Below the pieces are notes generated by a model. The model was not told the origin of the DNA and made no database searches. It saw only the letters and a list, made by a program, of their open reading frames with translations. A stretch of 64,000 nucleotides of DNA from Anolis carolinensis. Lineage: Eukaryota. This document shows positions 30,963 through 53,279 of the stretch, piece after piece. Both the position numbers and the translations under genes were made by a program. The stretch spans positions 13,565,190 to 13,629,189 of the forward strand of contig NC_085846.1 in assembly GCF_035594765.1 (NCBI RefSeq), in the 5' to 3' direction. The first letter of the stretch is position 1. Every line of letters starts with the position of its first letter.

Positions 30963-32439
30963 ATGCAGAAAGAGGAACTGGGCATGGATGAGAACCGCAA
31001 CCCAGAAGAGGAGCTGCACCTCCTGGCAGCAAAGAAGGAGAAATGCCACAACCTCAGCAACCGCATCCGCACAGGTGAGTTATTATTATTATTAGGTTTA
31101 GTTATAATAACAATAATAATAATAAACTTTATTTCTAGATCACCCTCTCTCCCCAGAGGGACTCAGGGCGGTTTGCATACATATAAAACAGCAAACATTC
31201 AATGCCACAACTACATCACTTAATATCAAAAAATAAATAATAAGTAATAACAATAAAATGTTAAGTAACATATTAACAATAAATTTCAAAATAACAGTTA
31301 AACCAATAAGAACGTTATTGCACACAGCATATACCTAGACCAGGGGTCCCCAAACTAAGGCCCGGGGCCGGATGCGGCCCTCCAAGGTCATTTACCTGGC
31401 CCCTGCCTTCAGTTTTATAATACAACATTTTTATATCAGTTTTAATAATATAATATTGTATATACATATAATATTGATAGAAATATATAATGTAATACAA
31501 TGTCATACTAATAATAATACCATATAATAATATTAATTATATATTATATATTACATGCAATATTACTAATAATATTACAATATATCAGTATAATTCAATA
31601 TAGTAATATATAATGCTAATATTGTTCTATGCTAATAATATAATATATTGTATATAGATATAAATTGTAAGCCGCTCTGAGTTCCCTTCGGGGTGAGGAC
31701 AGGATATAAATGTAGTAAATAATAAATAAATAAATAATTTTTTGACTTCGGCTTGCCCAAAATCTGAAATGACTTGAAGGCACACAACAACAATAATCTT
31801 AATTAACTTGACTATCTTGTTGGCCAGAAGCAGGTCCACACTTCCCATTGAAATCCTGATCGGTTTAAGTTGGTTAAAATTGTTTTATTTTTAAATATTT
31901 TATTTTTCTTTTGTTGTTGTTGTTGTTGTTGTTTTTGCACTACAAATAAGACATATGCAGTGTGCATAGGAATTTGTTCATTTTTTTTCTTCAAATGATC
32001 ATTCGGCCCCTCAACAGTCTGAAGGATTGTGGACCGGCCCTCTGCTTTAAAAGTTTGAGGACCCCTGACCTAGACCAATTAAAATGACCCAACTACAGAG
32101 GGTGTCTGGCATTAATTCAACATGTTATACCACACTTTTTTCTCCACAGAGGAGGCTCCTTTGGAATCTCCATAGGAGTATTTTGTTTCTCTCCACAATA
32201 TTCCCACAAAGCCCAGTGTTTTTTAGGGCCTGCTTTGGAGCCTGGAAAATCTCAGCCATAATAATAATAATAATACAATTATTTTTATCATGTCAGAAGC
32301 AACTTTATTACATACTGCAAGTCCCTTCTGGTGTGAGAGAATTGGCTGTCTACAAAGACATTACCTGAGGATGCCCAGATGTGTTACCATCCTGCTGGGA
32401 GGCTTTTCTCATGCCCCAAATATAATAGTAATATATAAT

Positions 32440-32473
<34 letters not shown>

Positions 32474-35400
32474 TATTTATATTCTGCCCTATCTCCCCAG
32501 GGGGACTCAGGGTGGATTCCAACATACAAAAAGGCAAACATTCCGTACCTTAATGAAACAAGCACATACTGACAAAATAATCCAGAATTAACGCCACATG
32601 TAAATGTAAAATTAGAACCTAACATCAATAAATTAAACAAAACGTAAGCAAACAAAATTATATAACGACATAAAAATTATATAATGACATGAAACTGCCA
32701 TCACAGCCACTTGGAGTTTGTACTTTTCTTTAAAAAGGTTATCAACTTTGTTCTATTGCCAAATTAAGACTGTTAGGAATCATGGGAGTTGAAGTCCAAA
32801 ACACCCAAAGTTTGCCTATGCCTGGCTAATCCATTATCCCTTTAGTCTCAATAATCTCTGAACTACTGGATTCAGAGTGCCTTCTTACTTCATCTTTTCT
32901 TGCCTCAACTGTGTAATTTCTGCCATGTTTGTGGGCACGAAATCTCATCTTTCGCCTCCAGTGGAGTTCCCCACAGTACCCCCTCTCCTCATATTGGGAA
33001 AATCATCTAAACTAACAGCTGTATTTCAGAGGAAAGAGCTGGCAAAACCACATCAGAGTATTCTTTCACTTTAAAAAAACCCTGTGAAATTTACAGGACC
33101 ATCAAAAGTTGACTGGCAACATACACAAGCAGCCTGAAGGCACATGTACATATACCCGCCCCCTTCATATTGGGAAAATATTGAAACTACCAGCTATATT
33201 TCAGAAGAAAGTTTCTCTCTACCACTAGAGTGCATTCCTGCTTCATTTTTTCTTGCCTCGACCATATAGAATCATAGAGTTGGAAGAGACCACAAGGGCC
33301 ATCCAGCCCAGCCCAATTCTTCCATGCAGGAAAATGTGTAGTTTCTGCCAAACCTGTGGACATGAAATCTCATCTGCTATCAGCAATACTTCAGAGGAAG
33401 GAACTGGCAAAACCACCTCTGAGTATTCCTTGCCCAGGAAAACCTTGTGAAATTCACAGGATCTTCATAAGCCAACAGGCAACTTGAAGGCACATGCATG
33501 CACATACCAGTTACCACATCTTTACAGACTATTGAGAGTCATGTCCACCCGCTGATAATTCTCAATGCACCAGTCTACACTAGCACTGGTTTCCTGTTCC
33601 CACCAGGATACCCCCTGTTCAGTTGCCCATTTAGTGGCTCCTTTTTTTTTGCAACAGAAATCTAAATGCAAGCTGTCCTTTTTGATCTGTAAATGCTGTA
33701 AATAAAACCTTCTTTCTGTCATGCAGGGAGTGGAGCAGAGCTGGGCTACAGGCCAAGCCAGGTCTCCAGAGAAGGTGTGTTATACTGAATTGGGGCTTTC
33801 CTATTCTTCTGTCATGGTGTCTGTGTGTTTTTCTGTCTCAGAAGGGCTTCATCTCACTGCAGGATGAGATAACGTTCACCCTCAGAACACCCAATTCCAC
33901 ACTATAATCCCTAGCCACTCAGTCTTGTTTATTGAAAAAGTATGAAAGAAAATGTGATTGTTTGCAACTCTTTTTATTTACTAGATACCAACTTTTCTAT
34001 TTATCGTACTTGTGGAAGGGTATAGCATTTATTTAATAGTGCAATTAAGCTTATAAATTAAAAGAACTGAAGATTTTAGAACTTCATATTCTCAGACTAG
34101 CAAAGTATGGAAGAACCCCATAGTTCAGAATTTCTAGGATTTTTTAAGCAAATGCAACAATCCCAAAGAAATGAGATTTAAGTCTTGGGTTTGACTTCCT
34201 TACATTTTGGCATTTGTCTCCAGCATTTCTGTTTTTCCTTTTTTACCTCTTTTTAGAAAAGCATAAAAATGAAGAGGCAGGTAGTTTGAAGCTAAAGCAG
34301 CATTCCATTTAACAACTACTTGGTAGCCAAGGGCAACCAGAAGTTTCGTGTGAAAAATGAGTGGGCTGGCGAAAGAATGACACATATATCCAGTCTTTCT
34401 CCACTAGCCTACTTGGTTTCTGTTGTGGCTGTGAAGGAGGGAGACTTATACTTCCTTCACCAGCCTGTTGGCAGAAAGCCTTTTTTTTTATAGTTGCTTA
34501 CCGAGGTACTAGTTGCTTGTCTTTCAGAGCTGGCCATAGAACAACAGGCGCCTCACCTCGTTTGTGTAAACAAAGTCCCAAGCAGTTAATAAAGAGGGGG
34601 GAAGTCAGCTTATAACTTCTTTTGACTTATTCAAAAGCCCAGCTAAATAAAAAAGCAAAGAGGTTAAAACAGTTTCAAGAGTGGTATTTCAGATTTTTGC
34701 TTTTCCTAAACTGTATCAGTATATAGAAGGGCCATTCCTGTGCTTGCCTCCAATCCCTTCTCTGTACATTTAAATGATTGTTTTGGAGGTTAATAAGCTT
34801 GTTATACTAAGGGATTTCTTTTTTTAAAAAACCTCTGTAGATTGGAAAGATGAGCGACACCTTGGGTTTTCCTGCCCATAACACATGTCTGGAGCCTGAT
34901 GCTCTTGTAAAATATGAACCTCTGCTTCTTCCTTTTATAAGGCCAGTGAGCTCCAAACTGGAGAAAAGGATTCAGCATTCAGCAGAAAAGCAGCAAACAT
35001 ACTTTGAATTTTTAAGGGTTCAGATGACTTGGCACCCTGCATTCTTACCAGATTTAAAATACTAGTTCAATAGGGTGCCCTATTTTATTTTAGTTACACA
35101 TGGGAATTGATAAGTCATAACTCATACATATGGGAAGTGACAGAGTAGTGGTAGGACTGGTGTGTCAGGGGCCAGTATAATTTTTTTGCCCATTAGTTAC
35201 AGTTGTTTTTCTTTCTTTCTTGCAACTCACCAGTTCCTCAGGAGCTGGCACCACACTGAGCAGCACTAATGCAGTAGTAAAAAATGGTTCTGGACACAGT
35301 TATGACAAGTTGAAAAAGTAACTACAGTAGAGTCTCACTTATCCAAGCCTCGCTTATCCAAGCCTCTGGATAATCCAAACTATTTTTGCAGTCAATGTTT

Positions 35401-38400
35401 TCAATATATCGTGATATTTTGGTGCTAAATTCGTAAATACAGTAATTACTACATAGCATTACTGCGTATTGAACTACTTTTTCTGTCAAATTTGTTGTAT
35501 AACATGAAGTTTTGGTGCTTAATTTGTAAAACCATAACCTAATTTGATGTTCAATAGGCTTTTCCTTAATCCCTCCTTATTATCCAAGTTATTCGCTTAT
35601 CCAAGCTCCTGCTGGCCCGTTTAGCTTGGATAGGTGAGACTCTACTGTAAATAAAATCTGGGCCCCTGCCTTTATACCAGAAATGAGAGGAGGCATTATT
35701 TTAAGAGATATGCCAGGATGCCTGTGACTCAGTATTCTCCTAATTGTGTGACTAATGCAAACCTTGCTCTCACTGTTGCTGTCCTTCCTCTTCAGGGTCA
35801 TGGGAGTCAAATGGTTATACCACCCCCGCTGAGATAGCAGATGAGCCCAGTGTTCCCCTGAGCCCTTCTAACAGCCTTAACATCCGCAACCTCCAGTTGT
35901 CTGAACGGGACCCTCCAGTTCCTCACCACCCGCGCCGCTACCCTCCCCACTTCTACCACAGCCGGCCCTTCCATGCTGCCTACCGCAAGACCTACCGAGG
36001 GAGTCCCTCAGACCGCAAAGAATGGGGGCCCAGCACCAATGGCCATCACCACTGTGCTCCGGAGGGTCTTTCCAATGGGCGATGGCAGCATCGGCGCCGG
36101 GGCTACTCTGACCCACCTTCCCCATCCTCCTCTCCGGAGTCAGAGCGAGGCGGCACCGTCAAAGCAAGTGAGAAACCTGCTGTGGCAACTAATGCCACTG
36201 GCACAACCACTGAAGAGTCTGGAAAGGAAACATGGTCACTCTTCAGGCCTCTTCCCGCTTTCCCGGTCGATAGCAGCAGCGCCCGGATCATCCCCAAGAT
36301 CTCGTATGCCAGCAAGCTGAAAGAGAACTTGGATCAGCCAGGGAAAGCCTGCCATGTTCCTGCCTCAGCCGTCCGCACCACGAATAGCCTCCCCAACTGT
36401 GTCTTGGCGCCACCCCCAAGTAACTCCCCACCTACTGACAACAGTCGGCGACAACATCTGGGAGCCATCTTCCAAAATGAATGGGGCCTCTCCTTTATCA
36501 ACGAGCCAGGGGCCGGGCATGGAGGGGGTGGCGGGACAGCATCAGATAAGGAGGAAGAGGAAGCAGATCCTGGAGCATGCTGGGAAAAAATGGAAGCTGG
36601 TGACTGGCAAGCTGCAAGAAATTATCATTTGGAAGGTAAGATGATGGAAGAGACCTAGGACTGTGTGAGGGAAGTGTGGCCACTGAGCTATGTATTCAGG
36701 CTTGGGAGCTGTGTGAATATATTATGTCTGTTTTGATTGAATATATTATGTCTGTTTTGAAGGGGATGATGTGAAAGATCAGGGATGCTTATGGTGATGG
36801 TGAAAATGTTTCAGGATGCCTTTTGAATTGTATGGAAGGGGAGGCAACTGGGATAGTACAAGATGTCTAGCGAGGAAGTAAAGGGCAGGTAGGGCAACTA
36901 GGGTTTAGATAAAATATAATTTATCTTCAAACTCTGTGCTTTGTTTTTCCTGAAATGTGCATTTGGTCACCACAGTTTCTTGATTCAGTTAATATTGAAA
37001 GCATTCTTAGTGAGTAGTGAGCTGCTTGACTATGTCCGAGGATGTAGGGACACTGATTGTTATTTAGTAATACGGCAAGTCAGTGTATAACTTCTAATTT
37101 TCCTTTTTTCTCTTTCCTAATATAGAATGGAGTCATATATGGGAACTACACAATCAAGGTAAGTCATGGAATGAACTCCCTGTACAATTCTCGATCAATC
37201 AAACTTAGACCTGTAAGATCAGTGATACAGGTAGTGTAGTACTTCCTGGTCCAGCTGACTTGATATTTTGTGCCCAGCTATCTGTATCTTCACTGCAGAA
37301 CTCAAGGTTGGCTATGTGATTTCCAAACTGTGATTTAGGTGATTACATACATTAAAAGTAGTCTTATGGATTTCTGGAGAATACAGTTGTACGAGTTGGA
37401 GGGATGTAAGAGATGGAGTGGTATTTGGAGATCTTTGAAGGGGGACATTATTCCAAGAGTCAATGTGTACTTTATCTTATTTTTTATCAGAAACAATAGC
37501 TGGGACCCTTTGCAATTACCGTAATAGCTGGATTAATAGCCACAACAATTAATAGCTGGATTAATAGCCACAACAATTAATAGCTGGATTAATAGCTACA
37601 ACAAATACAAACTGATCTTTACTTTAGAAACATAATTTTCTTAATGCATTGGTCAGTTCCTTGTCATATAGCCATTGACACATGCACATAAATACCCCGA
37701 TGAAGCACACTATTTTATAAAGGAAATTTTATCTAAAAGTTGAGACAGGGTGAATTCATATTTTAACATCCTTTGACTTTTTGAAAACAAGACTTTAGTT
37801 GTGCTTGAGCACATAGTTCCTAATTTTCAAGCCTTAATTGCTGCATGATGCTGACTAATCTAGAGCCTAACCCTCCAGTGAAAGGATCACATTGTGCTTT
37901 GCAAAATATTTTCAGTCAGAGAACATAAATCTGGACACCTCATATGTCAGTGACACCTAAGACCCATTAGTCAGCACCATCCAAAGACCAACAGAGCAGG
38001 GCATGCCTTCTGCAGTAGCAGCTATTGAATCTGGATAAGGTGTACAGATGCTATTACAAGGCTGGCTGGTTTTCTGGAGTATGGGGAGATGTAGAAACTA
38101 TACTGAATGAGATTGGGACACATGGGGAGAGGTGCTGGAGACAACCACTGATTCTGGGTGTGGGTTTGCCCTCGATAGTTCAGCCCATTTATAGGATAAC
38201 TGTGTTCTTGTGAAGACTTGTCAGAGGTCTATTATTTCACTAACTTAATACATTAGACTAGGGCTAGCAAACACATTTGCACTGAGGGCCACATCAGCCT
38301 TACGGTTGCCTTCAAAGGGCCATTGATGGAGAATCTGGATACAGAGGGCCAACTATCATATTTCTACATAGCGTTTGGTACACTTTAGTTTTTATCCATT

Positions 38401-38763
38401 TTGGGTCCCCAGATGTTATTGAATTCAATTCAAATCCCACTCTCCTGACTAAAAGAATAAACTGCAGTCTTCTGGATGTTACTGCATCACAACTCCATCA
38501 GCTCTAGTCATGATGTCTAATGACTGAGGAATATAGGAAGACAGTATCTAGAAGGCCACATAAAATGACATGATGGACTAGACTGAATTTGATACATGTG
38601 CATTAGAATAATGAGGCCTGAAGAAACCCTGGGATCTGTTTTGCCATGAAACATCTCTACTGAGTATGTGTGTTCATTTCAACATCACCACCTGTTTTTC
38701 TTTTCCCCTCTAGCTCCTAGCAGAGTGATGGTCTACACGGATACCTTGGACGGAAAAGGTTAA
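30963..38763 (+). CDS. NUFIP2-like protein (~344 aa), compact paralog of nuclear FMR1-interacting protein 2
   Basis: Exons 30963-31074, 35796-36635, 37126-37158, 38714-38763; all introns phase 1, 1035 nt in total. NUFIP2 blocks: GYTTP, KETWSLFRPLPAFPVDSSSARIIPKISYASKLKENL, LGAIFQNEWGLSFINEPGAG, YHLEEWSHIWELHNQ. AATAAA at 39036. Confidence 0.85.
31341..32067. mobile_element. hAT (hobo-like) non-autonomous element
   Basis: Same TIR family; perfect 8-bp TSD ACCTAGAC; carries an L2-type 3' tail internally. Confidence 0.9.
37522..37605. repeat. 28-bp tandem repeat x3
   Basis: TAATAGCTGGATTAATAGCCACAACAAT repeated three times head-to-tail. Confidence 0.9.
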
Positions 38764-42660: not shown

Positions 42661-43079
42661 CAATGTTAATTTGCTCTTAGGTTTACAATGTAAATAATGG
42701 AAGGCAGGAAGAAAAAGGAAAGAGGAAGAGACAAAGGAAGGGAAGAATTTAAAAAGCGGAGGAAGGAAGAGTGGGTAGGTATATGAGGGAAAGGAAGGAA
42801 AGAGGTAGAAGGGGCATGAGGGAAATGGAGAAAGGAAAGAAGGCCACAGCTTCAGGAGCCAGGTGGGAAATGGAGCCCAGGAGAAAGGTTTATTTAAAAA
42901 AATAATCTGAGGAAATTGAAGAAAATATCTTCATATGGATCTGGCCTTTCCACTTCAGCAGAGGAGCCATTTATAAGGCTAAGTTAACACTACTCCAAAA
43001 TCCTTTTCAATGGTGGAAGAGAGGAGGAAGCCTCAAATGACGACTTTTGCCCACAAACAAAATGGCTCCCCAAACTTCC

Positions 43080-43340
43080 AGCAAATGGGGCCGTTCTGCG
43101 CTTCTTCTCTATGCTCCTGGTACAAGGGCCAAAGAGCGGGAAGACGTGCTTTCCATATAAGGAAACAGGCCGGCGTGCGGGCGCACGTACGTACGCGCGA
43201 CGAACATGCTCAAGTCAGACTCTGGCTGATTGAAAGTAGAGGGGCGCCGTTTGCTCTTAAAGGGACCGTAGCCTCGATACTCGGCAAGGCCTGTAAAGGA
43301 GGGGGAATCGGCGGAAGCTGGCGGCAACAGCAGGACGGAG
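43080..43340 (+). promoter_or_regulatory. CpG promoter and non-coding first exon, probably of TMEM219 and/or the Harbinger-derived gene
   Basis: Local CpG cluster, near-palindrome GCGCACGTACGTACGCGC, reverse CCAAT (GATTG), strong donor GAG|gtaaga at 43340/43341. No other CpG island seen before the TMEM219 coding exons. Confidence 0.65.
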
Positions 43341-45147
43341 GTAAGATATGTATATATGTCTATATTTAAGTGGTGGTGTCAGGGTGAAAACTGGAGAGGG
43401 TCCCTGTGCCTTTAATGGCTACACAGCCATATAATTCAGATGATCTGCTTTGAATTGCATTATATGAGTCTACACGGCTATATAATCCAAAAATAGATAG
43501 ATAGATGGATTTTATGGAGAGATAGTGAGATAGATGCATGAAGGCTTTCTAATTGTTTAGGACAATGGTTCTCAACCTGTGGGTCCCCATATTTCTTGGC
43601 CTTCAACTCCCAGAAATCCTAACAGCTGGTAAAATGGCTGGGATTTCTAGGAGTTGTAGGCCAAAACACCTGGGGACCCACAGTTTAAGAACCACTGGTT
43701 TAGGAGATACTTCTGTCTACCTACCTATCTATCCATCCATTTATCTATATGTATAGATGCGATATATGGGTACTATGGATGAGTAGATAGATAGATCAAG
43801 GGAGGCTCCATAATTGTTTAGGAGATACTCCTTTTATCTGTCATTCTATCCATCTGTCTCTCCATCCATCTATCTAGCCTTCTAGATCTATAGATGTATG
43901 GGTACTAAAGATTTATGGATACATTGATAAAAGGAGGCATTGTAATTATTTAGGAGATACTTCTATCTGTCAATCTATCTAGCTATCTCTCCATCCATGC
44001 AGCCATCTATCTACCCATTCATCGATCCATCTATCCTTCTATATCTATAGGTATGGGTACTATAGGCTGCTCTGAGTCCACTTTGGGGTTAGAAGGGCGT
44101 AGTATAAATATGGTAAATGAATAAATAAAAATAAAATCCAGTTCAAAGCAGGTAATCTAGATCCAGAAACTGAGTTATATGGCTGTGCAGATGCGGCCTT
44201 AAACCCATGGCAGCGTGATTATTTGGAATCTGTAGAGCAAAGGTTATATAAACCCCAGGCTTCTTAAAAATTTTCCACTCGTAACCCCTTTCCTCCCGAG
44301 GAATTTTTCCTGATCCGAGGTATATTCCATAGGTACAGTAGAGTCTCACTTATCCAAGCTAAACGGGCCGGCAGAAGCTTGGATAAGCGAATATCTTGGA
44401 TAATAAGGAGGGCTTAAGGAAAAGCCTATTAAACATCAAATTAGGTTATGATTTTACAAATTAAGCACCAAAACTTCATGTTATACAACAAATTTGACAG
44501 AAAAAGTAGTTAAATATGCAGTAATGTTAAGTTGTAATTACTGTATTTACGAATTTAGCACCAAAATATCACGATATATTGAAAACATTGACTACAAAAA
44601 TGGCTTGGATTATCCAGAGGCTTGGATAAGCGAGGCTTGGATTAGTGAGACTCTACTGTATATAAAATAGGAATAGAAATCAAACATTTGCTGAAAATAA
44701 ATCAGCATTTGCAAGGCTTGCTAGACAGGCTGATTATCTTTTTTGTGAAGTATAGCTGAAGCATTTTCTGCAAAGTCCAGTCCACTAGAAACACTGCACT
44801 TAAGTTGCTAACAGATTTGTGTAAATGGATGGCATTCGGAAACCTTTTACTGCTGCCAATTACTGAGGCCACTTTCATTCCAAATGCCCCACTCCTCTCA
44901 GTGTTCTTCAAGAAAATTAATGTTCGGTTGCAGGATATTTTTGCATCTTCTCACACAATGAAGGTAGACCAATTCACCTGAATTTGATGCAAATGTTTGA
45001 CTTCAAGTTCCAGAAATCTCAGCTATTTTGGCCAATAATCAGGGATTCTGGAAGCTGAAGACCAAAACACCTGGACAGCCAGAGTTTGGGAAACTGTGTT
45101 TATAGCCCCAAGATCTGCAGAGTACTATGTGATAATTGCCTACTCGG

Positions 45148-48684: not shown

Positions 48685-50595
48685 ATGCTTTTGTGGCAAT
48701 TGGAATGGGCAACACTTTTCATGAAAGCTCTGGCAAGGTTAGCAGGAGAGGTGGCAAAGGGAGAAAGGAATAGCATAGTGAACATAATTTTTATTCCTCT
48801 GTATTGTTAGCAGCAAAATGCCATTAAAAACTATATGAAAATTTGCTGGGGAAATGTATTTTATGATTTATTTACACATACATACATGTCCCAGTTTTCA
48901 TGTTAACACCAGCACATTGGCTCCCATCTGCTGCAGCTTCTCCAATTATCAGATTAATTAGAGAACATTGGTCTCTTGCTTTTCATGAGTATCCAGTATA
49001 ACATGATACATAGAGCACAAGCATCCACTCATAGGGTAACACTCATTATAGTGCTTTGAATGCGATTTCCTGCTTCTTGGCAGGGGGCTGGACTGGGTGG
49101 CTCATGAGGTCTCTTCCAACTCTATGATTATATGACTCTATATACCTATTCCTAATATGGTACTCAGAAATTGGTACTGCTGAGTTCAATGGGATTTGCT
49201 TTCATACAAGGATGTGTAGGGTTGCAGCCATAATCTAACAGCAACATACTGAAATTTGTGAAGTGTGAGAAAATTAGTATCATTAAAAGCTATATATGTG
49301 TGCAAATCTTAAAACGAATATTAGATGAGTTCTAAATGCTTTTCACTGCTGTTCTTTTAAAAAATAAGGCAGTAGGGCAAAGAGGCATTAAATTACTTCT
49401 GCAAGTGTTGCTAAGGGTAGTGAAATAGCAGCTGAACAGAATTATTTGGGTCAGTAGGCCCACAGAACTGAGCCTCAAACACTGAGAATACATTAATGTC
49501 TTGCTCATTTCACGGAAAAGAGGATTTAAAACTTCATTCAGCTGCAGTCAAGGTTTGAATGAAATGCTTTTGGAGGAATTAAATTAACCTCTTGAAATCT
49601 TGCTTTTGTAACTGGAGTAGGGATTCTGAAAATGGGCAAGATTATAAATCGAGTGAGGATCTAGTGGTTCCGTCACAACCTGCTTATAATGATGTAGCCA
49701 TAACTGCCTTTGATTATGTGTAAAGGGACGTTCATTACTACTGAGTGACTACAATTTGGCTGGATGCAGGACTTTCATGGGAGCTATGCTTTTATGTTAG
49801 AAAACATGGCTTGATTGATCAGCTTGGAGTGCAAGTACTAAAGCATTAAATGTTCTAGTTTGAGCAAACATTAGGTATAGGTAAATAACTAAGTGATGAT
49901 CAGTTGTGTTAGAAGAATCATAGAATAATAGAATTGGAAGAGACCACATGGCCATCTAGTTCAACCTACCATGCAGGAAAAGCGCAATCAAAGCACTCCC
50001 GAAAGATGGCCATCCAACTTGTTTAAAAACCTCCAAGAAAGGAACTTCCACCACATTCTGAGGCAGGGAGTTCCACTGTTGAACAATTTTTACAGTCAGG
50101 AAGTTATGCTTCTGAATTCTCTAGGCTGCATGACAAAACCAAACCACACATTGCTTTCTTAAAGCTTGAGACGTTTTGCAGGATCGGGAATCCTTGTGGC
50201 CTCCCAATGTGAGCTATGACATAATTCCTGGTTATTTGCCATACTATTTGAGGGTTATGATACCCATAGTCAGAAACACCTGTAAGGTATTTCTAAATTA
50301 TTCTTCCTGTGCATAAGCAGAAAAGAATTGCTTTACTAGTATATTAGGAGGAAAGGCCTTTATAATTGAAATGTAAATGTGATTTAATTAGCAAGCAAAA
50401 AGACAATTAAAATGTATTGCCCTTCAGTTCAACAGTGCCTTTCCAGGTGAAGTTCAAAGACCGCTTTTGAGTTCTCCTTGCCTGCAGTTGTCATCCCTGC
50501 CTTGGCCATTGGTGTAGTTGGGGGATGGATTTTGATCTCCCAGCACAGTTACATCCCCTTTGAACCTACTGTGAACTTCAAGAGAGGCTGGATAA

Positions 50596-51951
50596 ATGGA
50601 GCAGGAGTGCCTAGCTCTTGTTGCTGCCTGTGTTCAAACATCTCAGTTGCTCATACAACAATGGATGCTCAACAGACGTGCCGTGATTTTTGCCATAGCC
50701 AGAATCCTGCAGCGCAGGCGCTTCCGACGATCAGCTGCAGTGCTGCGGCGTATCCTCTCCGCGAGCGTGCGACGCAAGAGAGCCCTGCTACGCCTTCACC
50801 GAAATGCTATTGTCTCTGTGGTCACCATGGTATACTCCTCTTCTCCTGCCCTGCACTATGAGCATGAGCTGATGGCCTTGTCGGAGAGATCACATTGGAT
50901 GCTTCCAAGATGCAGTGAATGGTGGGAGCGGATGATTTCTTCAGAGCAGGATGACAGGTGCTGGATTTCTTTGTTCCGAATGTCACGCTCTACACTTATG
51001 TATATCGCAGAGGAGTTGCGCCCCGCCTTGCAGCGTCGAGACACTGGCATGCGGTCACACATACCTGTTGAAAAAAGGGTTGCCATGACCATCTGGAAGT
51101 TAGCTCACCATGACAGTTACAAGACCGTCTCAGAACTCTTTGGGGTGGGAATTTCATCTGCTTGCTCAATATTTGAAGAGGTCTGTGAGGAAATAAACAG
51201 CAGGCTGTTGACTCAGACAATTCAGTTGGGAGACCCAGAGCAAATCATGGAAGGCTTCAAAGAGATGGGCTTCCCCAACTGTCTGGGCGCAATTGATGCC
51301 ATACACATCTCTATACTTTGCCCACCATTTTCAGCTGACTCTTACATTAATTGTAAAGGCTTCTATTCAATGGTATTGCAGGCCCTGGTGGACAGCAGAT
51401 CTCGCTTCACTGATATCTATGTTGGCTTTCCTGAGCGGTCTCACGATTCCCGCATCCTGCACAACTCTCCTTTTTTCAACAGTATGGATGAGGGTACCTT
51501 TGGGCCACAAACTCCATTGGTGCTGGAGGGGGTCTCAATGACTCCAGTCATAATTGGAGATCATGCATATCCACTTCGCCCCTGGTTAATGAAGCCATAC
51601 CCAACGCCAAAAACTGAGGCTCAAGAGACATTCAACGAGAGACTAGCTAAGTGCCGAGCCTGTGTGGAGAGAGCTTTTGGGGTCCTGAGAGCTCGCTGGA
51701 GATGTTTGCAGATGAGGCTGGATGTCAGGGAGAAGCTCATCCCAGTAGTCATAGCTACATGCTGTATCCTACACAATATCTGTGAGATCAAAGGTGATGA
51801 GCTGTTGGAGCCACTAGAAAGCCCTATTGCTACCGAAAACCAGAATGCTTCTGCTAGGCCAAGGGTACCATTGTCAGAAGCAGGATTGACCAAAAGAGCT
51901 TGTCAGATTAGGGCAGTTTATTGCTCTTATTTTGAAAAGAACCCTTTGTAA
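50596..51951 (+). CDS. PIF/Harbinger transposase-derived protein (HARBI1/ALP1-like, DDE_Tnp_4), 451 aa, single coding exon
   Basis: Uninterrupted ORF. N-terminal motifs SEWW..FRMSRST..IPVEKRVAMTIWKLA..FGVG (HTH region). Catalytic motifs GAID(D234)AIH, SHD(D284), GD(D322)HAYP, VE(E358)RAFGVLRARWRCL and CCILHNIC. Acceptor ttccag| at 50446; AATAAA at 52013. Confidence 0.9.
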   Translation: MEQECLALVAACVQTSQLLIQQWMLNRRAVIFAIARILQRRRFRRSAAVLRRILSASVRRKRALLRLHRNAIVSVVTMVYSSSPALHYEHELMALSERSHWMLPRCSEWWERMISSEQDDRCWISLFRMSRSTLMYIAEELRPALQRRDTGMRSHIPVEKRVAMTIWKLAHHDSYKTVSELFGVGISSACSIFEEVCEEINSRLLTQTIQLGDPEQIMEGFKEMGFPNCLGAIDAIHISILCPPFSADSYINCKGFYSMVLQALVDSRSRFTDIYVGFPERSHDSRILHNSPFFNSMDEGTFGPQTPLVLEGVSMTPVIIGDHAYPLRPWLMKPYPTPKTEAQETFNERLAKCRACVERAFGVLRARWRCLQMRLDVREKLIPVVIATCCILHNICEIKGDELLEPLESPIATENQNASARPRVPLSEAGLTKRACQIRAVYCSYFEKNPL

Positions 51952-53279
51952 AAGAGCTGTGTGTCATGAAATACTGAAGTGAACTCCATAGTACCAAGTT
52001 TTATAGAAATTAAATAAAAGATTGCTTTTGAATAGCCCATTGTTATATTTTTAACAAAAGATTTTCTGTAGATAATTGCTATAGTGAAAGCAATTTTACA
52101 AACAATTCTCAATATAGTATGGGATTGGAACCAGTGATGGTATAAATGGGTCGTTTCCACATGAACTGTTTAGTATATATAAATCCCTTAATTCTTCACT
52201 GAAACATCAGCAGAAATGATTTAGGCAGCATGTTCAATAGCCACAGTAAATGAAAGTCAGTCCACATTTTCTACCTGCAGAGTGGCAGTGTAAATTTGTC
52301 CTTACAAATGTTATTACCTTCATCTCCCAGAAGCTCCAACCAGCATGGCTAATAGTGAGGGATTGTAGGAATTACAGTCTGAAAAACCAAAAGTCCCCTG
52401 TCCCCAAACTACACCACGACTGCAATCCTATGCATCCTTACCTGGGAATAAGCCTTACTGAACTAACCTGGATTTATTTACAGCATGGAACTATATCAGG
52501 ATTTTTATGAATTTATTTGGTCCAGACCGCAGTGTTTAAATGGCCGGTCTCTGGCTTAAGTTCAGAGAGGCAGAAAAGACTCCATATCAATTGCCCATTG
52601 ATTTAAGAAAGAATAATTCTCTTACTTCCATAGAAATGTTCATTTTCCAGTCAAAGCACTTGTTAAAAAATTAATGACTGACAACAAAGCAGAACAGAAA
52701 TACATGGATTCAATATGGCTTCCATTGCATTAATGACCTGGATGCTCTCCAATTTGTCGCAGACCCTCCCAGGCCCCTTCTACCCTGCCACAAAAAAATC
52801 AATTGACCTTGAACTGAAAATTATATGGCAGTGTAGACTCGTATAATCTAGTTCAAAGAAGATAATGTGGATTGACTGCTTTGATAATTTGGATTATATG
52901 ACAGTGTAAAAGGGGACCCAGTTTCATGAGAAGTATTGCCAAATATTGAAAAATGCAATAGAAGCTCTATGGTGATTAAATATGTGTGTCCTACATAAGT
53001 ATGGGAACCACAGAATAGTTGAAAATTATGTGCCATTTTCTACAATTAAAGTACTTGAGTGCTTAGCCAGATAACTTTAACAATTATTTAACAAAAACAC
53101 ACCATGTTGTTCCATCTCAGTAGACCACTGACTTATCTTATTCCCTTTGCTTCTTGCACTAGATAGCAGCCTTACTACAGCTGAACTCCTTCAGGTGCTA
53201 AATGCTCTAAGGAGAGCCCCTCTTTTTCTCATCACTGTAGGCTACTATAATAACAAGAACAGCAATTTTCTTACCAGCT

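What the first reader, a model, noticed from the sequence alone, without database searches (positions are those of the whole stretch)
50447..52018. Candidate domesticated Harbinger transposase gene with an intact DDE triad
Seen: a clean 451-codon ORF in a window where the other TE coding remnants (BovB, CR1, L2) are truncated or broken. It has a pyrimidine tract and AG acceptor 149 nt upstream of the ATG and AATAAA 62 nt after the stop. I see no TIR pair or TWA TSD around it and no intact Myb/SANT ORF. D234, D284, D322 and E358 are kept (35 residues between D322 and E358), but neighbouring motifs deviate from my recollection of active transposases (GAIDGTH>GAIDAIH, NRKG>NCKG, GWPGS>GFPER). Known: autonomous PIF/Harbinger elements encode a transposase and a Myb-like protein between TIRs; HARBI1 (vertebrates) and ALP1 (plants) are domesticated copies. 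This sequence does not resemble HARBI1 proper, which is ~349 aa and lies beside ATG13. Inference: an independent, host-recruited Harbinger nuclease-fold gene not known from human 16p11.2.
Basis: partly seen in the sequence, partly recalled or inferred. Interest (0 to 1): 0.88.

Follow-up and report, generated by a model that had tools for sequence, protein, structure and literature searches.

The report
Tamed Harbinger transposase gene in squamates
Lizards and snakes have kept one former jumping-gene enzyme almost unchanged for about 200 million years as an ordinary host gene that borrows the promoter and first exon of its neighbour TMEM219; it is a solid new example of a known kind of gene taming, and what it does is untested.

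Summary
Window 50596-51951 (+) is an intact 451-codon ORF with a full PIF/Harbinger DDE_Tnp_4 domain (7e-30). It is a host gene, not a transposon. A 451-aa, indel-free ortholog that is 94-99% identical occurs in geckos, lacertids, an amphisbaenian, a cordylid, iguanians and snakes. In all 7 loci fetched it lies between a NUFIP2-like gene and TMEM219, one copy per genome. Pairwise dN/dS is 0.011-0.041 while dS is about 1. There are no TIRs, no Myb-like ORF and no second copy. Two turtles have the same KCTD13/NUFIP2-like/TMEM219/TAOK2 order but no trace of the ORF.

Spliced transcript contigs from three studies join one upstream exon (ending at 43340) either to the ORF exon (starting at 50428, ending about 52030-52050 after AATAAA) or to TMEM219 exon 2 (starting at 56107). 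An in-frame TAA just before the ATG rules out a fusion protein.

D234, D284, D322 and E358 are invariant, but four motif residues near them were replaced and then fixed, including G280E.

A 2011 paper on anole transposons had already called five unlocated Harbinger ORFs of 442-466 aa probable domestications. RefSeq names this protein "IGFBP-3 receptor isoform X1". The same scan also noted the shared-promoter layout on this window (s1-632833). Function is untested.

The parts
43309..43340 (+). 3' end of the shared, probably non-coding first exon; the donor GT is at 43341-43342. The transcription start is not mapped. One contig carries 79 letters upstream of the junction, so the exon probably reaches at least about 43260.
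   Evidence: The same 28-30 loose letters precede both the ORF exon and TMEM219 exon 2 in contigs of runs X1, X6, X13 and X14. They match the window only at 43311-43338. The sequence there reads GGACGGAG|gtaaga.
50428..52040 (+). Alternative terminal exon that carries the whole transposase-derived gene: 5' UTR 50428-50595, CDS, and 3' UTR. The 3' end is approximate (52029-52051).
   Evidence: One contig per run spans 50426 to 52029-52051 in four runs from four studies, with the exon-1 letters attached at the 5' side in three of them. The acceptor is cccttcag|TTCAACAG. The acceptor region is conserved in 8 squamates.
50596..51951 (+). CDS of 451 codons plus TAA, encoding the Harbinger (PIF/IS5-type) transposase-derived protein. 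An in-frame TAA at 50593-50595 lies directly before the ATG.
   Evidence: Orthologs are 94-99% identical with no indels. dN/dS is 0.011-0.041.
50599..50841 (+). Residues 2-82: one long arginine-rich helix. It could be a partner or oligomerisation surface, or a nuclear-import signal (inferred).
   Evidence: AlphaFold2 model, pLDDT 75-89 over this part. It matches only generic coiled coils. No Pfam family hits residues 1-130. dN/dS is 0.016.
50917..51264 (+). Residues 108-223: helical DNA-binding (HTH) region typical of Harbinger transposases.
   Evidence: Weak HTH_Tnp_4 match at residues 157-204, 18.9 bits, below the cut-off of 27. Helices have pLDDT above 90. Residues 123-199 are invariant in 15 squamates. 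dN/dS is 0.013 over residues 96-225.
51280..51795 (+). Residues 229-400: RNase H-like DDE catalytic core. Codons: D234 at 51295-51297, D284 at 51445-51447, D322 at 51559-51561, E358 at 51667-51669.
   Evidence: DDE_Tnp_4 covers residues 233-394. In the model D234 is on strand 1, D322 follows strand 318-320 and E358 is on helix 341-367. The fold matches piggyBac (Z 10.1), Tn5 (Z 9.3) and Tn4430 (Z 8.4) transposases. All four acidic residues are invariant in the orthologs.
52013..52018 (+). Polyadenylation signal AATAAA.
   Evidence: Contigs end 11-33 nt after it. An A(A/T)TAAA signal aligns at this place in all 8 squamates while the rest of the 3' UTR is poorly conserved.
56107..56273 (+). TMEM219 exon 2, the first canonical coding exon (ATG at 56115). 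It is the alternative splice target of the same first exon. Later coding exons start at 57605 and end at 58488.
   Evidence: tblastn of P0095. Contigs in four runs join the exon-1 letters to 56105/56107 and continue from 56273/56274 into the next exon. The sequence is shown.

Best explanation
This is a single-copy, immobile host gene derived from a PIF/Harbinger transposase. It was fixed before the last common ancestor of living squamates and has been under very strong protein-level selection since.

Shown: the gene has no promoter exon of its own. It sits in the first intron of TMEM219. The shared first exon is spliced either to the proximal acceptor at 50428, giving a two-exon mRNA that ends at its own poly(A) signal and encodes the 451-aa protein, or to the distal acceptor at 56107, giving TMEM219 mRNA. 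The two proteins share no residues.

Inferred: the protein keeps the whole transposase architecture, namely a long N-terminal helix, an HTH DNA-binding region, and an RNase H-like core with all acidic residues. It most likely acts in the nucleus as a DNA-binding protein that still binds metal at a transposase-type active site, as proposed for HARBI1. It may work with a Myb/SANT-trihelix partner that brings it to the nucleus and to DNA. Whether it still cuts DNA is open; I put that at roughly even odds.
For: Orthology and age:
- All 15 cluster members listed are 451 aa. They come from geckos, lacertids, Rhineura, Hemicordylus, Anolis, Pogona and five snakes.
- Their alignment has 97% mean column identity and no indels.
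- The gene order is the same in seven fetched loci, each on one contig.
- Two turtles spanning the turtle crown show the same neighbours but no Harbinger-like sequence (best tblastn E 0.54 and 0.64).

Selection:
- NG86 dN is 0.011-0.036, dS is 0.36-2.2, and the ratio is 0.011-0.041 in all 28 pairs.
- Every domain is constrained, with ratios of 0.013-0.063.
- The host product TMEM219 is only 74.5% identical on average across the same species, against 95.6% for this protein.

Not a transposon:
- No TIRs, no Myb-like ORF and no second copy in the window.
- The exact protein is found on one contig.

Transcription:
- Spliced contigs from three studies carry exon 1 joined to the ORF exon, and four carry exon 1 joined to TMEM219 exon 2.
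- The acceptor and the poly(A) signal are conserved in 8 species.
- RefSeq merges the protein into the TMEM219 gene as 'isoform X1' in at least 8 species.

Fold and residues. A sister paralog clade has lost D322 and E358, whereas this clade kept them.
Against: - No protein-level or functional data exist.
- The runs are labelled 'RNA?' (a guess). Only the spliced junctions show that they are RNA, and contigs give no tissue, level or strand.
- Retention of the four acidic residues is weak evidence for catalysis, because about 83% of all columns are invariant anyway.
- Residues that are nearly universal in the family were replaced beside the active site and then fixed: G280E (G in 73 of 77 relatives), G235A, T236I/V and R253C. 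This could mean altered or lost activity.
- No partner protein was identified.
- The only outgroups tested are turtles, so origin on the squamate stem versus an earlier origin with loss is not settled.
- dS is near saturation in deep pairs, so the ratios are approximate. The bias would tend to make the true ratio lower, not higher.
Confidence: 0.88

Rival explanations
1. The protein is a catalytically dead scaffold or DNA-binding regulator, like plant ALP1/ALP2. On this view the acidic residues are kept only for folding or metal-dependent structure, and the function is chromatin or transcription regulation without DNA cleavage.
For: Clade-specific replacements sit next to the active site at otherwise near-invariant family positions, and were fixed for about 200 My: G280E, G235A, T236I/V, R253C and P239S. 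The HTH region has the lowest dN/dS, 0.013. Other squamate Harbinger-derived paralogs have clearly lost catalytic residues. Most characterised domesticated Harbinger proteins act through protein and DNA binding (PMC7282668, PMC5339849).
Against: D234, D284, D322 and E358 all survived a long stem branch (about 0.7 changes per site) on which many other motif residues changed. They remain invariant, and the DDE core itself has dN/dS 0.025.
Confidence: 0.4
2. The gene is older than squamates, for example an amniote or lepidosaur gene, and was lost in turtles and other lineages rather than gained on the squamate stem.
For: A long stem branch separates the clade from its nearest relatives. At today's slow rate this would imply a great age unless evolution was fast before fixation. 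Tuatara, crocodilians and birds could not be examined.
Against: No protein above 51% identity exists outside the squamate cluster among 5.8 billion sequences, although turtles contribute dozens of hits at 40-50%. Both turtle loci have an uninterrupted NUFIP2-like to TMEM219 interval without any remnant; in Carettochelys the gap to the first TMEM219 coding exon is only about 1.2 kb.
Confidence: 0.12
3. The conservation reflects a non-coding role of the DNA, such as an intronic enhancer, a TMEM219 5' UTR element, or a poly(A) trap that tunes TMEM219. On this view the ORF is incidental.
For: The exon lies inside the TMEM219 transcription unit and competes with TMEM219 splicing.
Against: Synonymous sites are close to saturation (dS about 1, nucleotide identity only 82-89%) while amino acids are 94-99% identical and the frame has no indel in 8 genomes. 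The UTRs are much less conserved than the protein. This pattern arises only from selection on the protein.
Confidence: 0.02
4. It is a still or recently mobile autonomous Harbinger copy that happens to lie near TMEM219.
For: The ORF is intact and has a complete DDE triad.
Against: There are no TIRs, no Myb-like second gene and one copy per genome. The position is identical in lineages that split about 200 My ago.
Confidence: 0.01

Closest known systems
[quoted passage not shown] 2008, as summarised in PMC9392472)
   Same: Both are single-copy host genes derived from a PIF/Harbinger transposase. Both lack TIRs, retain the DDE residues, are under purifying selection, and have an unknown cellular function. 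Both are expected to depend on a Myb-like partner.
   Different: This is an independent capture. It lies between the NUFIP2-like gene and TMEM219 rather than at the HARBI1 locus. It is 451 aa rather than about 349 aa (my own knowledge). It is found in squamates and is absent at the orthologous site in two turtles, whereas HARBI1 occurs in all jawed vertebrates (PMC9392472). It has no first exon of its own but uses that of TMEM219. A direct sequence comparison with true HARBI1 was not run.
The five Harbinger-related ORFs of the anole genome (Novick et al. 2011, PMC3014272, section on Polinton/Maverick and PIF/Harbinger)
   Same: Same species and the same description: 442-466 aa, diagnostic motifs kept, no TIRs, no TTA/TAA duplications, proposed to be domesticated. 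This ORF (451 aa) is very probably one of the five.
   Different: That paper gives one paragraph, and the held text has no coordinates, orthologs, selection test, expression or gene structure. All of those are supplied here.
CSB-PGBD3
   Same: In both, a transposase ORF inside a host-gene intron is used through an upstream splice acceptor and its own poly(A) site, in competition with normal host splicing.
   Different: CSB-PGBD3 is an in-frame fusion protein. Here only a (probably) non-coding first exon is shared, and an in-frame TAA sits directly before the ATG, so two unrelated proteins are made.
Plant ALP1/ALP2 and HDP1, and Drosophila DPLG genes (PMC4671723, PMC7282668, PMC5339849, PMC9710019)
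   Same: All are domesticated PIF/Harbinger transposases. RefSeq even names some orthologs of this gene, and its paralogs, 'ALP1-like'.
   Different: These were independent events in other kingdoms or phyla, and ALP1-type proteins lost catalytic residues. In a tree of 52 family members this protein groups with reptile sequences, not with the two plant sequences used as outgroup. The 'ALP1-like' name is only an automatic label.

Membership tests
PIF/Harbinger transposase superfamily (Pfam DDE_Tnp_4) | Catalytic-domain profile match above the curated threshold | tested here: met
   PF13359 at 7e-30, 104.2 bits against a cut-off of 24.8, residues 233-394 covering profile positions 1-158 of 158. 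PF04827 at 3.7e-17.
PIF/Harbinger transposase superfamily (Pfam DDE_Tnp_4) | Acidic catalytic residues at the family's conserved positions on an RNase H-like fold | tested here: met
   D234, D284, D322 and E358 align with the family's D/D/D/E columns. They sit on strand 1, at the start of helix 284-290, after strand 318-320 and on helix 341-367 of the model. The fold matches piggyBac, Tn5 and Tn4430 transposases at Z 8.4-10.1.
PIF/Harbinger transposase superfamily (Pfam DDE_Tnp_4) | HTH DNA-binding region N-terminal to the core | tested here: inconclusive
   HTH_Tnp_4 scores 18.9 bits, below the cut-off of 27. Confident helices are modelled at 108-223, and relatives carry PF13613/PF26138.
Autonomous Harbinger transposon | Terminal inverted repeats and TTA/TAA target duplications around the element | tested here: not met
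   No credible inverted pair brackets the ORF within 43-57 kb.
Autonomous Harbinger transposon | Second gene for a Myb/SANT-trihelix protein | tested here: not met
   tblastx of a Myb_DNA-bind_4 gene region from a paralogous locus (L008) against the whole window gave no hit. Only that one query was used.
Autonomous Harbinger transposon | Multiple dispersed copies | tested here: not met
   One contig per exact protein and one match in the window. Whole-genome tblastn was not possible.
Domesticated (host) transposase gene | Orthologs at the same genomic position across distant species | tested here: met
   The order NUFIP2-like, ORF, TMEM219 on one strand holds in Eublepharis, Heteronotia, Podarcis, Rhineura, Pogona, Candoia and Crotalus, and in the window.
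Domesticated (host) transposase gene | Purifying selection on the protein | tested here: met
   dN/dS is 0.011-0.041 in 28 pairs and 0.013-0.063 per domain.
Domesticated (host) transposase gene | Expression as a processed host transcript | tested here: met
   Contigs with the exon 1 to ORF-exon junction occur in three studies, and they end after AATAAA. Tissue and level are unknown.
HARBI1 orthogroup | Orthologous position and presence throughout jawed vertebrates | tested here: not met
   The neighbours are the NUFIP2-like gene and TMEM219. The ORF is absent from the same interval in two turtles. HARBI1 is reported in all jawed vertebrates (PMC9392472).
Host-transposase fusion gene (transposase capture by exon shuffling) | In-frame splicing of host coding exons to the transposase part | tested here: not met
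   An in-frame TAA lies at 50593-50595 directly before the ATG. The open frame that RefSeq model P0122 reads through exon 1 would stop at TGA 50445-50447 in the ORF exon.

The most novel reading that the evidence does not exclude
The protein is still an active, site-directed DNA nuclease or recombinase that squamates use on their own genome. In addition, its position as a proximal terminal exon makes a splice/polyadenylation switch, so that one promoter yields either this nuclease or the IGFBP-3 death receptor TMEM219, coupling the dosage of the two.
Probability: 0.1. Interest if true: 0.75.

Novelty: new member of a known kind. Interest (0 to 1): 0.5.

Why it matters
Only one transposase-derived Harbinger gene, HARBI1, is generally listed for vertebrates (PMC9392472), and its function is still unknown.

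This gene is a second, independent and much younger capture with an intact catalytic core. It is among the most constrained proteins one could expect: about 4% amino-acid divergence between geckos and snakes, five to six times less than its host gene's product.

It gives a natural comparison for asking what Harbinger nucleases are kept for. Its sister paralog clade has lost the catalytic residues, which provides a built-in contrast.

It also has a practical consequence. In many RefSeq annotations the protein is named "IGFBP-3 receptor isoform X1", which hides the gene and contaminates TMEM219 protein sets.

Tried and rejected
- **Solved structures by sequence:** no relative found. Foldseek against the PDB gave only weak integrase and transposase rows with E above 0.009. 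VIA-align was needed to see the piggyBac, Tn5 and Tn4430 matches.
- **Homodimer prediction of the full protein:** no verdict (score 0.01). This is no evidence either way.
- **Look-up of P0004:** not on record.
- **Per-codon mapping of TMEM219 for a dN/dS control:** failed because tblastn pieces ran into introns. I used amino-acid identity of stored TMEM219 proteins instead.
- **Exon 1 in other squamates:** it is too divergent to find by blastn. The only hit was an 18-nt match at the donor site in Podarcis, so sharing of exon 1 in other species rests on RefSeq's merged gene models and on a Rhineura TMEM219 model that spans the ORF.
- **Outgroups:** TMEM219 searches returned only turtles, so tuatara, crocodilians and birds could not be tested.
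- **Gecko paralog P0018:** its locus shows no TIRs or Myb-like gene, so no source transposon was identified.
- **Literature searches for a description of this gene:** only the 2011 anole paper.
- **harbiTRIM preprint (PMC12262214):** it describes another Harbinger locus beside TRIM genes. I could not show which paralog that is.
- **Constraints kept:** No human sequence was used.
Full report
**Observation**

Window 50596-51951 (+) holds an uninterrupted ORF of 451 codons. Pfam places a complete DDE_Tnp_4 domain at residues 233-394 (7e-30, 104 bits, cut-off 24.8), with Plant_tran (3.7e-17) and a sub-threshold HTH_Tnp_4 match at 157-204. AATAAA lies 62 nt after the stop. Against 77 relatives, GAIDGTH reads GAIDAIH, NRKG reads NCKG and GWPG reads GFPE, while D234, D284, D322 and E358 stand at the family's acidic columns. 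No inverted repeat pair of any quality brackets the ORF within 43-57 kb. The window has no second copy and no match to a Myb-like gene taken from a paralogous locus.

**Orthologs and synteny**

A search of 5.8 billion proteins gave one 90%-identity cluster of 44 members; the next best hit was only 48% identical over 78% of the query. All 15 members listed are exactly 451 aa. They come from three geckos, two lacertids, Rhineura, Hemicordylus, Anolis sagrei, Pogona and five snakes, plus the window's own protein. Their alignment has no indel, 97% mean column identity, and 94-99% identity to the window.

The window's genome is Anolis carolinensis. Its protein and the RefSeq A. carolinensis TMEM219 model lie on a contig of the same length, and earlier scan notes call the genome the anole.

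I fetched seven loci: Eublepharis, Heteronotia, Podarcis, Rhineura, Pogona, Candoia and Crotalus. In every one the ORF lies downstream of a NUFIP2-like gene (not called in Heteronotia) and upstream of TMEM219, all on one strand, and each exact protein is on a single contig. The window has the same order, with TMEM219 coding exons from 56115 to 58488.

**Selection**

Nei-Gojobori estimates over the eight coding sequences give dN 0.011-0.036, dS 0.36-2.2 and dN/dS 0.011-0.041 in all 28 pairs. Nucleotide identity is only 82-89% in most pairs (92.5% between the two snakes), so the conservation is on the protein, not the DNA.

Each part is constrained:

| Region | dN/dS |
|---|---|
| N-terminal helix | 0.016 |
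| Linker plus HTH | 0.013 |
| DDE core | 0.025 |
| C-terminal tail | 0.063 |

As a local control, TMEM219 proteins of six of the same species average 74.5% identity, against 95.6% for this protein. The UTRs are far less conserved than the protein. The exceptions are the splice-acceptor region and the poly(A) signal, which align in all eight species.

**Outgroups**

TMEM219 searches returned only turtles outside squamates. Carettochelys (49.8 kb, no gaps) and Emydura (24.5 kb, no gaps) both show KCTD13, the NUFIP2-like gene, TMEM219 and TAOK2 in the expected order. tblastn with the 451-aa protein finds nothing in either locus (best E 0.54 and 0.64). The gene therefore arose, or was at least retained, on the lineage to squamates after the split from turtles and before the gecko-snake split.

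**Transcript structure**

Eighteen public runs from six studies hold the whole exon. The small assemblies are labelled "RNA?". I laid contigs of four runs from four studies on 50300-56299.

- In every run one contig of about 1.6 kb starts at 50426 and ends at 52029-52051.
- In three runs that contig is preceded by the letters GCGGAAGCTGGCGGCAACAGCAGGACGG.
- The same letters precede the TMEM219 exon at 56105 in all four runs, and that contig continues from 56274 into the next TMEM219 exon.
- The 28-mer occurs once in the window, at 43311-43338, followed by AG and a gtaaga donor.

Allowing for the shared AG, exon 1 ends at 43340, the ORF exon starts at 50428 (cccttcag|TTCAACAG) and TMEM219 exon 2 starts at 56107. 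These junctions show that the contigs are RNA.

One first exon is therefore spliced to two mutually exclusive targets. No contig joined the ORF exon to TMEM219 exons.

An in-frame TAA directly precedes the ATG. The frame that RefSeq model P0122 reads through exon 1 would stop at 50445-50447. There is therefore no fusion protein.

RefSeq's naming of the 451-aa protein as [quoted passage not shown] in Notechis, Vipera, Podarcis, Crotalus, Candoia, Pogona, Heteronotia and Rhineura fits a shared first exon in those species too. A Rhineura TMEM219 model spans the ORF. Exon 1 itself is too divergent to align, apart from an 18-nt donor match in Podarcis. I did not build or search any joined spliced sequence.

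**Fold and active site**

The AlphaFold2 model, built on an 86-sequence alignment, has mean pLDDT 85.6 and pTM 0.74.

- Residues 2-82 form a single long helix.
- Residues 108-223 form a helical region.
- Residues 229-400 form a mixed core. D234 is on the first strand, D284 opens helix 284-290, D322 follows strand 318-320 and E358 lies on helix 341-367.

That is the RNase H-like order expected for D-D-E, with D284 as a fourth acidic residue. I could not read the coordinates, so I measured no distances.

Foldseek found no clear PDB match. VIA-align placed residues about 120-407 on piggyBac (Z 10.1), Tn5 (Z 9.3) and Tn4430 (Z 8.4) transposases, and residues 1-85 only on generic coiled coils. No Harbinger-type structure was found by sequence search either.

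**Family tree**

In a 52-sequence maximum-likelihood tree the nine 451-aa proteins form a tight clade with end branches of 0.004-0.027, on a long stem.

- Its sister is a single long-branched gecko paralog, P0018. That paralog has consensus-like motifs (GAVDGTH, NRKG, GFPG) and no TIRs or Myb neighbour.
- Next comes a clade (Anolis R4G9P6 of 442 aa, a Varanus protein, and a Logan contig) in which D322 is G and E358 is T or A.
- Then comes a second short-branched squamate clade of 468-515 aa, named "ALP1-like".
- Then comes a multicopy turtle clade.

The substitutions G235A, T236I/V, R253C and G280E thus arose on the stem of the 451-aa clade and have been frozen since. Over the same stem all four acidic residues were kept, while the neighbouring paralog lineage lost two of them. 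This favours a continued need for the metal-binding site, but only moderately, because about 83% of all columns are invariant in the clade anyway.

**Mechanism**

Shown: it is a single-copy gene fixed in squamates, selection acts on the protein, and it is expressed by alternative splicing of the TMEM219 first exon to a self-terminating exon.

Inferred: a nuclear DNA-binding protein with a transposase-type active site, possibly dependent on a Myb-like partner. Harbinger transposases and HARBI1 are imported into the nucleus and targeted by such partners (Sinzelle et al. 2008, as summarised in PMC9392472). Whether it cleaves DNA is undecided. A homodimer prediction gave no verdict.

Because the ORF exon is the proximal splice and poly(A) choice, its use necessarily competes with TMEM219 mRNA production. 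Whether that competition is regulated is unknown.

**What is known**

PMC9392472 lists HARBI1 and NAIF1, plus the MSANTD genes, as the Harbinger-derived genes of vertebrates, with HARBI1 the only one derived from the transposase.

Novick et al. 2011 (PMC3014272) reported five Harbinger-related ORFs of 442-466 aa in the anole. [quoted passage not shown] The authors judged them very likely domesticated. This ORF fits that description, but the held text gives no coordinates and no further analysis.

A 2025 preprint (PMC12262214) mentions an "apparently domesticated", transcribed Harbinger element beside a squamate TRIM cluster. That is a different neighbourhood from this one.

I found no paper that links a transposase to TMEM219 or that describes this gene's orthologs, selection or structure.

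The scan's own earlier notes on this window proposed the shared-promoter layout (s1-632833), which I confirm. Another note reports a further domesticated Harbinger gene elsewhere in this genome (s1-552490).

**Verdict**

This is a real and well-supported domesticated Harbinger transposase gene: a new, independently captured member of the HARBI1-like kind. It was anticipated in outline in 2011 and is hidden in RefSeq under a TMEM219 isoform name. Interest is moderate.

Noticed in passing
P0056 (Paroedura picta, 559 aa) and P0061 (Heteronotia binoei, 588 aa): Gecko gene models combine a KRAB domain (PF01352) with a Harbinger DDE_Tnp_4 domain. They are possible KRAB-Harbinger host-transposase fusions, and they fall in a separate squamate clade of the tree.
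   Followed up: no
L008:1-14275 (Varanus komodoensis): The 'ALP1-like' Harbinger-derived gene of 515 aa belongs to a second short-branched squamate clade of 468-515 aa. A Myb_DNA-bind_4 gene lies just upstream of it on the same strand. This could be a co-domesticated transposase/Myb pair, or the 'intact Harbinger' of the harbiTRIM preprint.
   Followed up: partly
P0002, P0007 (Anolis carolinensis R4G9P6, 442 aa) and P0024 (Varanus): The next paralog clade out, after gecko P0018, has G in place of D322 and T or A in place of E358. It is a catalytically dead Harbinger-derived lineage close to the intact one.
   Followed up: partly
window 43010-43342: RefSeq model P0122 (A. carolinensis TMEM219 isoform X2, 355 aa) takes 111 extra N-terminal residues from an open frame that runs through the promoter region and first exon into TMEM219 exon 2. 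This is probably a longest-ORF artefact, because other squamate TMEM219 proteins are 240-243 aa.
   Followed up: partly
window about 30963-38763; L001-L006 and L009, L011: The NUFIP2-like gene (PF15293) upstream of the ORF is present in the same place in six of the seven squamate loci and in both turtles, between KCTD13 and TMEM219. It is therefore at least as old as the turtle-squamate ancestor.
   Followed up: partly
P0027 and P0079 (Carettochelys insculpta): Turtle Harbinger-type ORFs are named as isoforms of unrelated host genes (2-hydroxyacid oxidase 2 isoform X5; glucocorticoid-induced transcript 1 isoform X4). Harbinger ORFs inside host transcription units may often be mis-named this way.
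   Followed up: no
window 50524-50562: The 5' UTR of the ORF exon holds a short upstream ORF (ATG GAT TTT ... TGA, 12 codons) ahead of the main ATG, which has a strong context (A at -3, G at +4). Its conservation was not checked.
   Followed up: no
window 52700-52899: Contig depth jumps to 34-2800 in all four runs over about 200 nt of the intron downstream of the ORF exon, with many loose ends. This is most likely a dispersed repeat that is expressed elsewhere.
   Followed up: no
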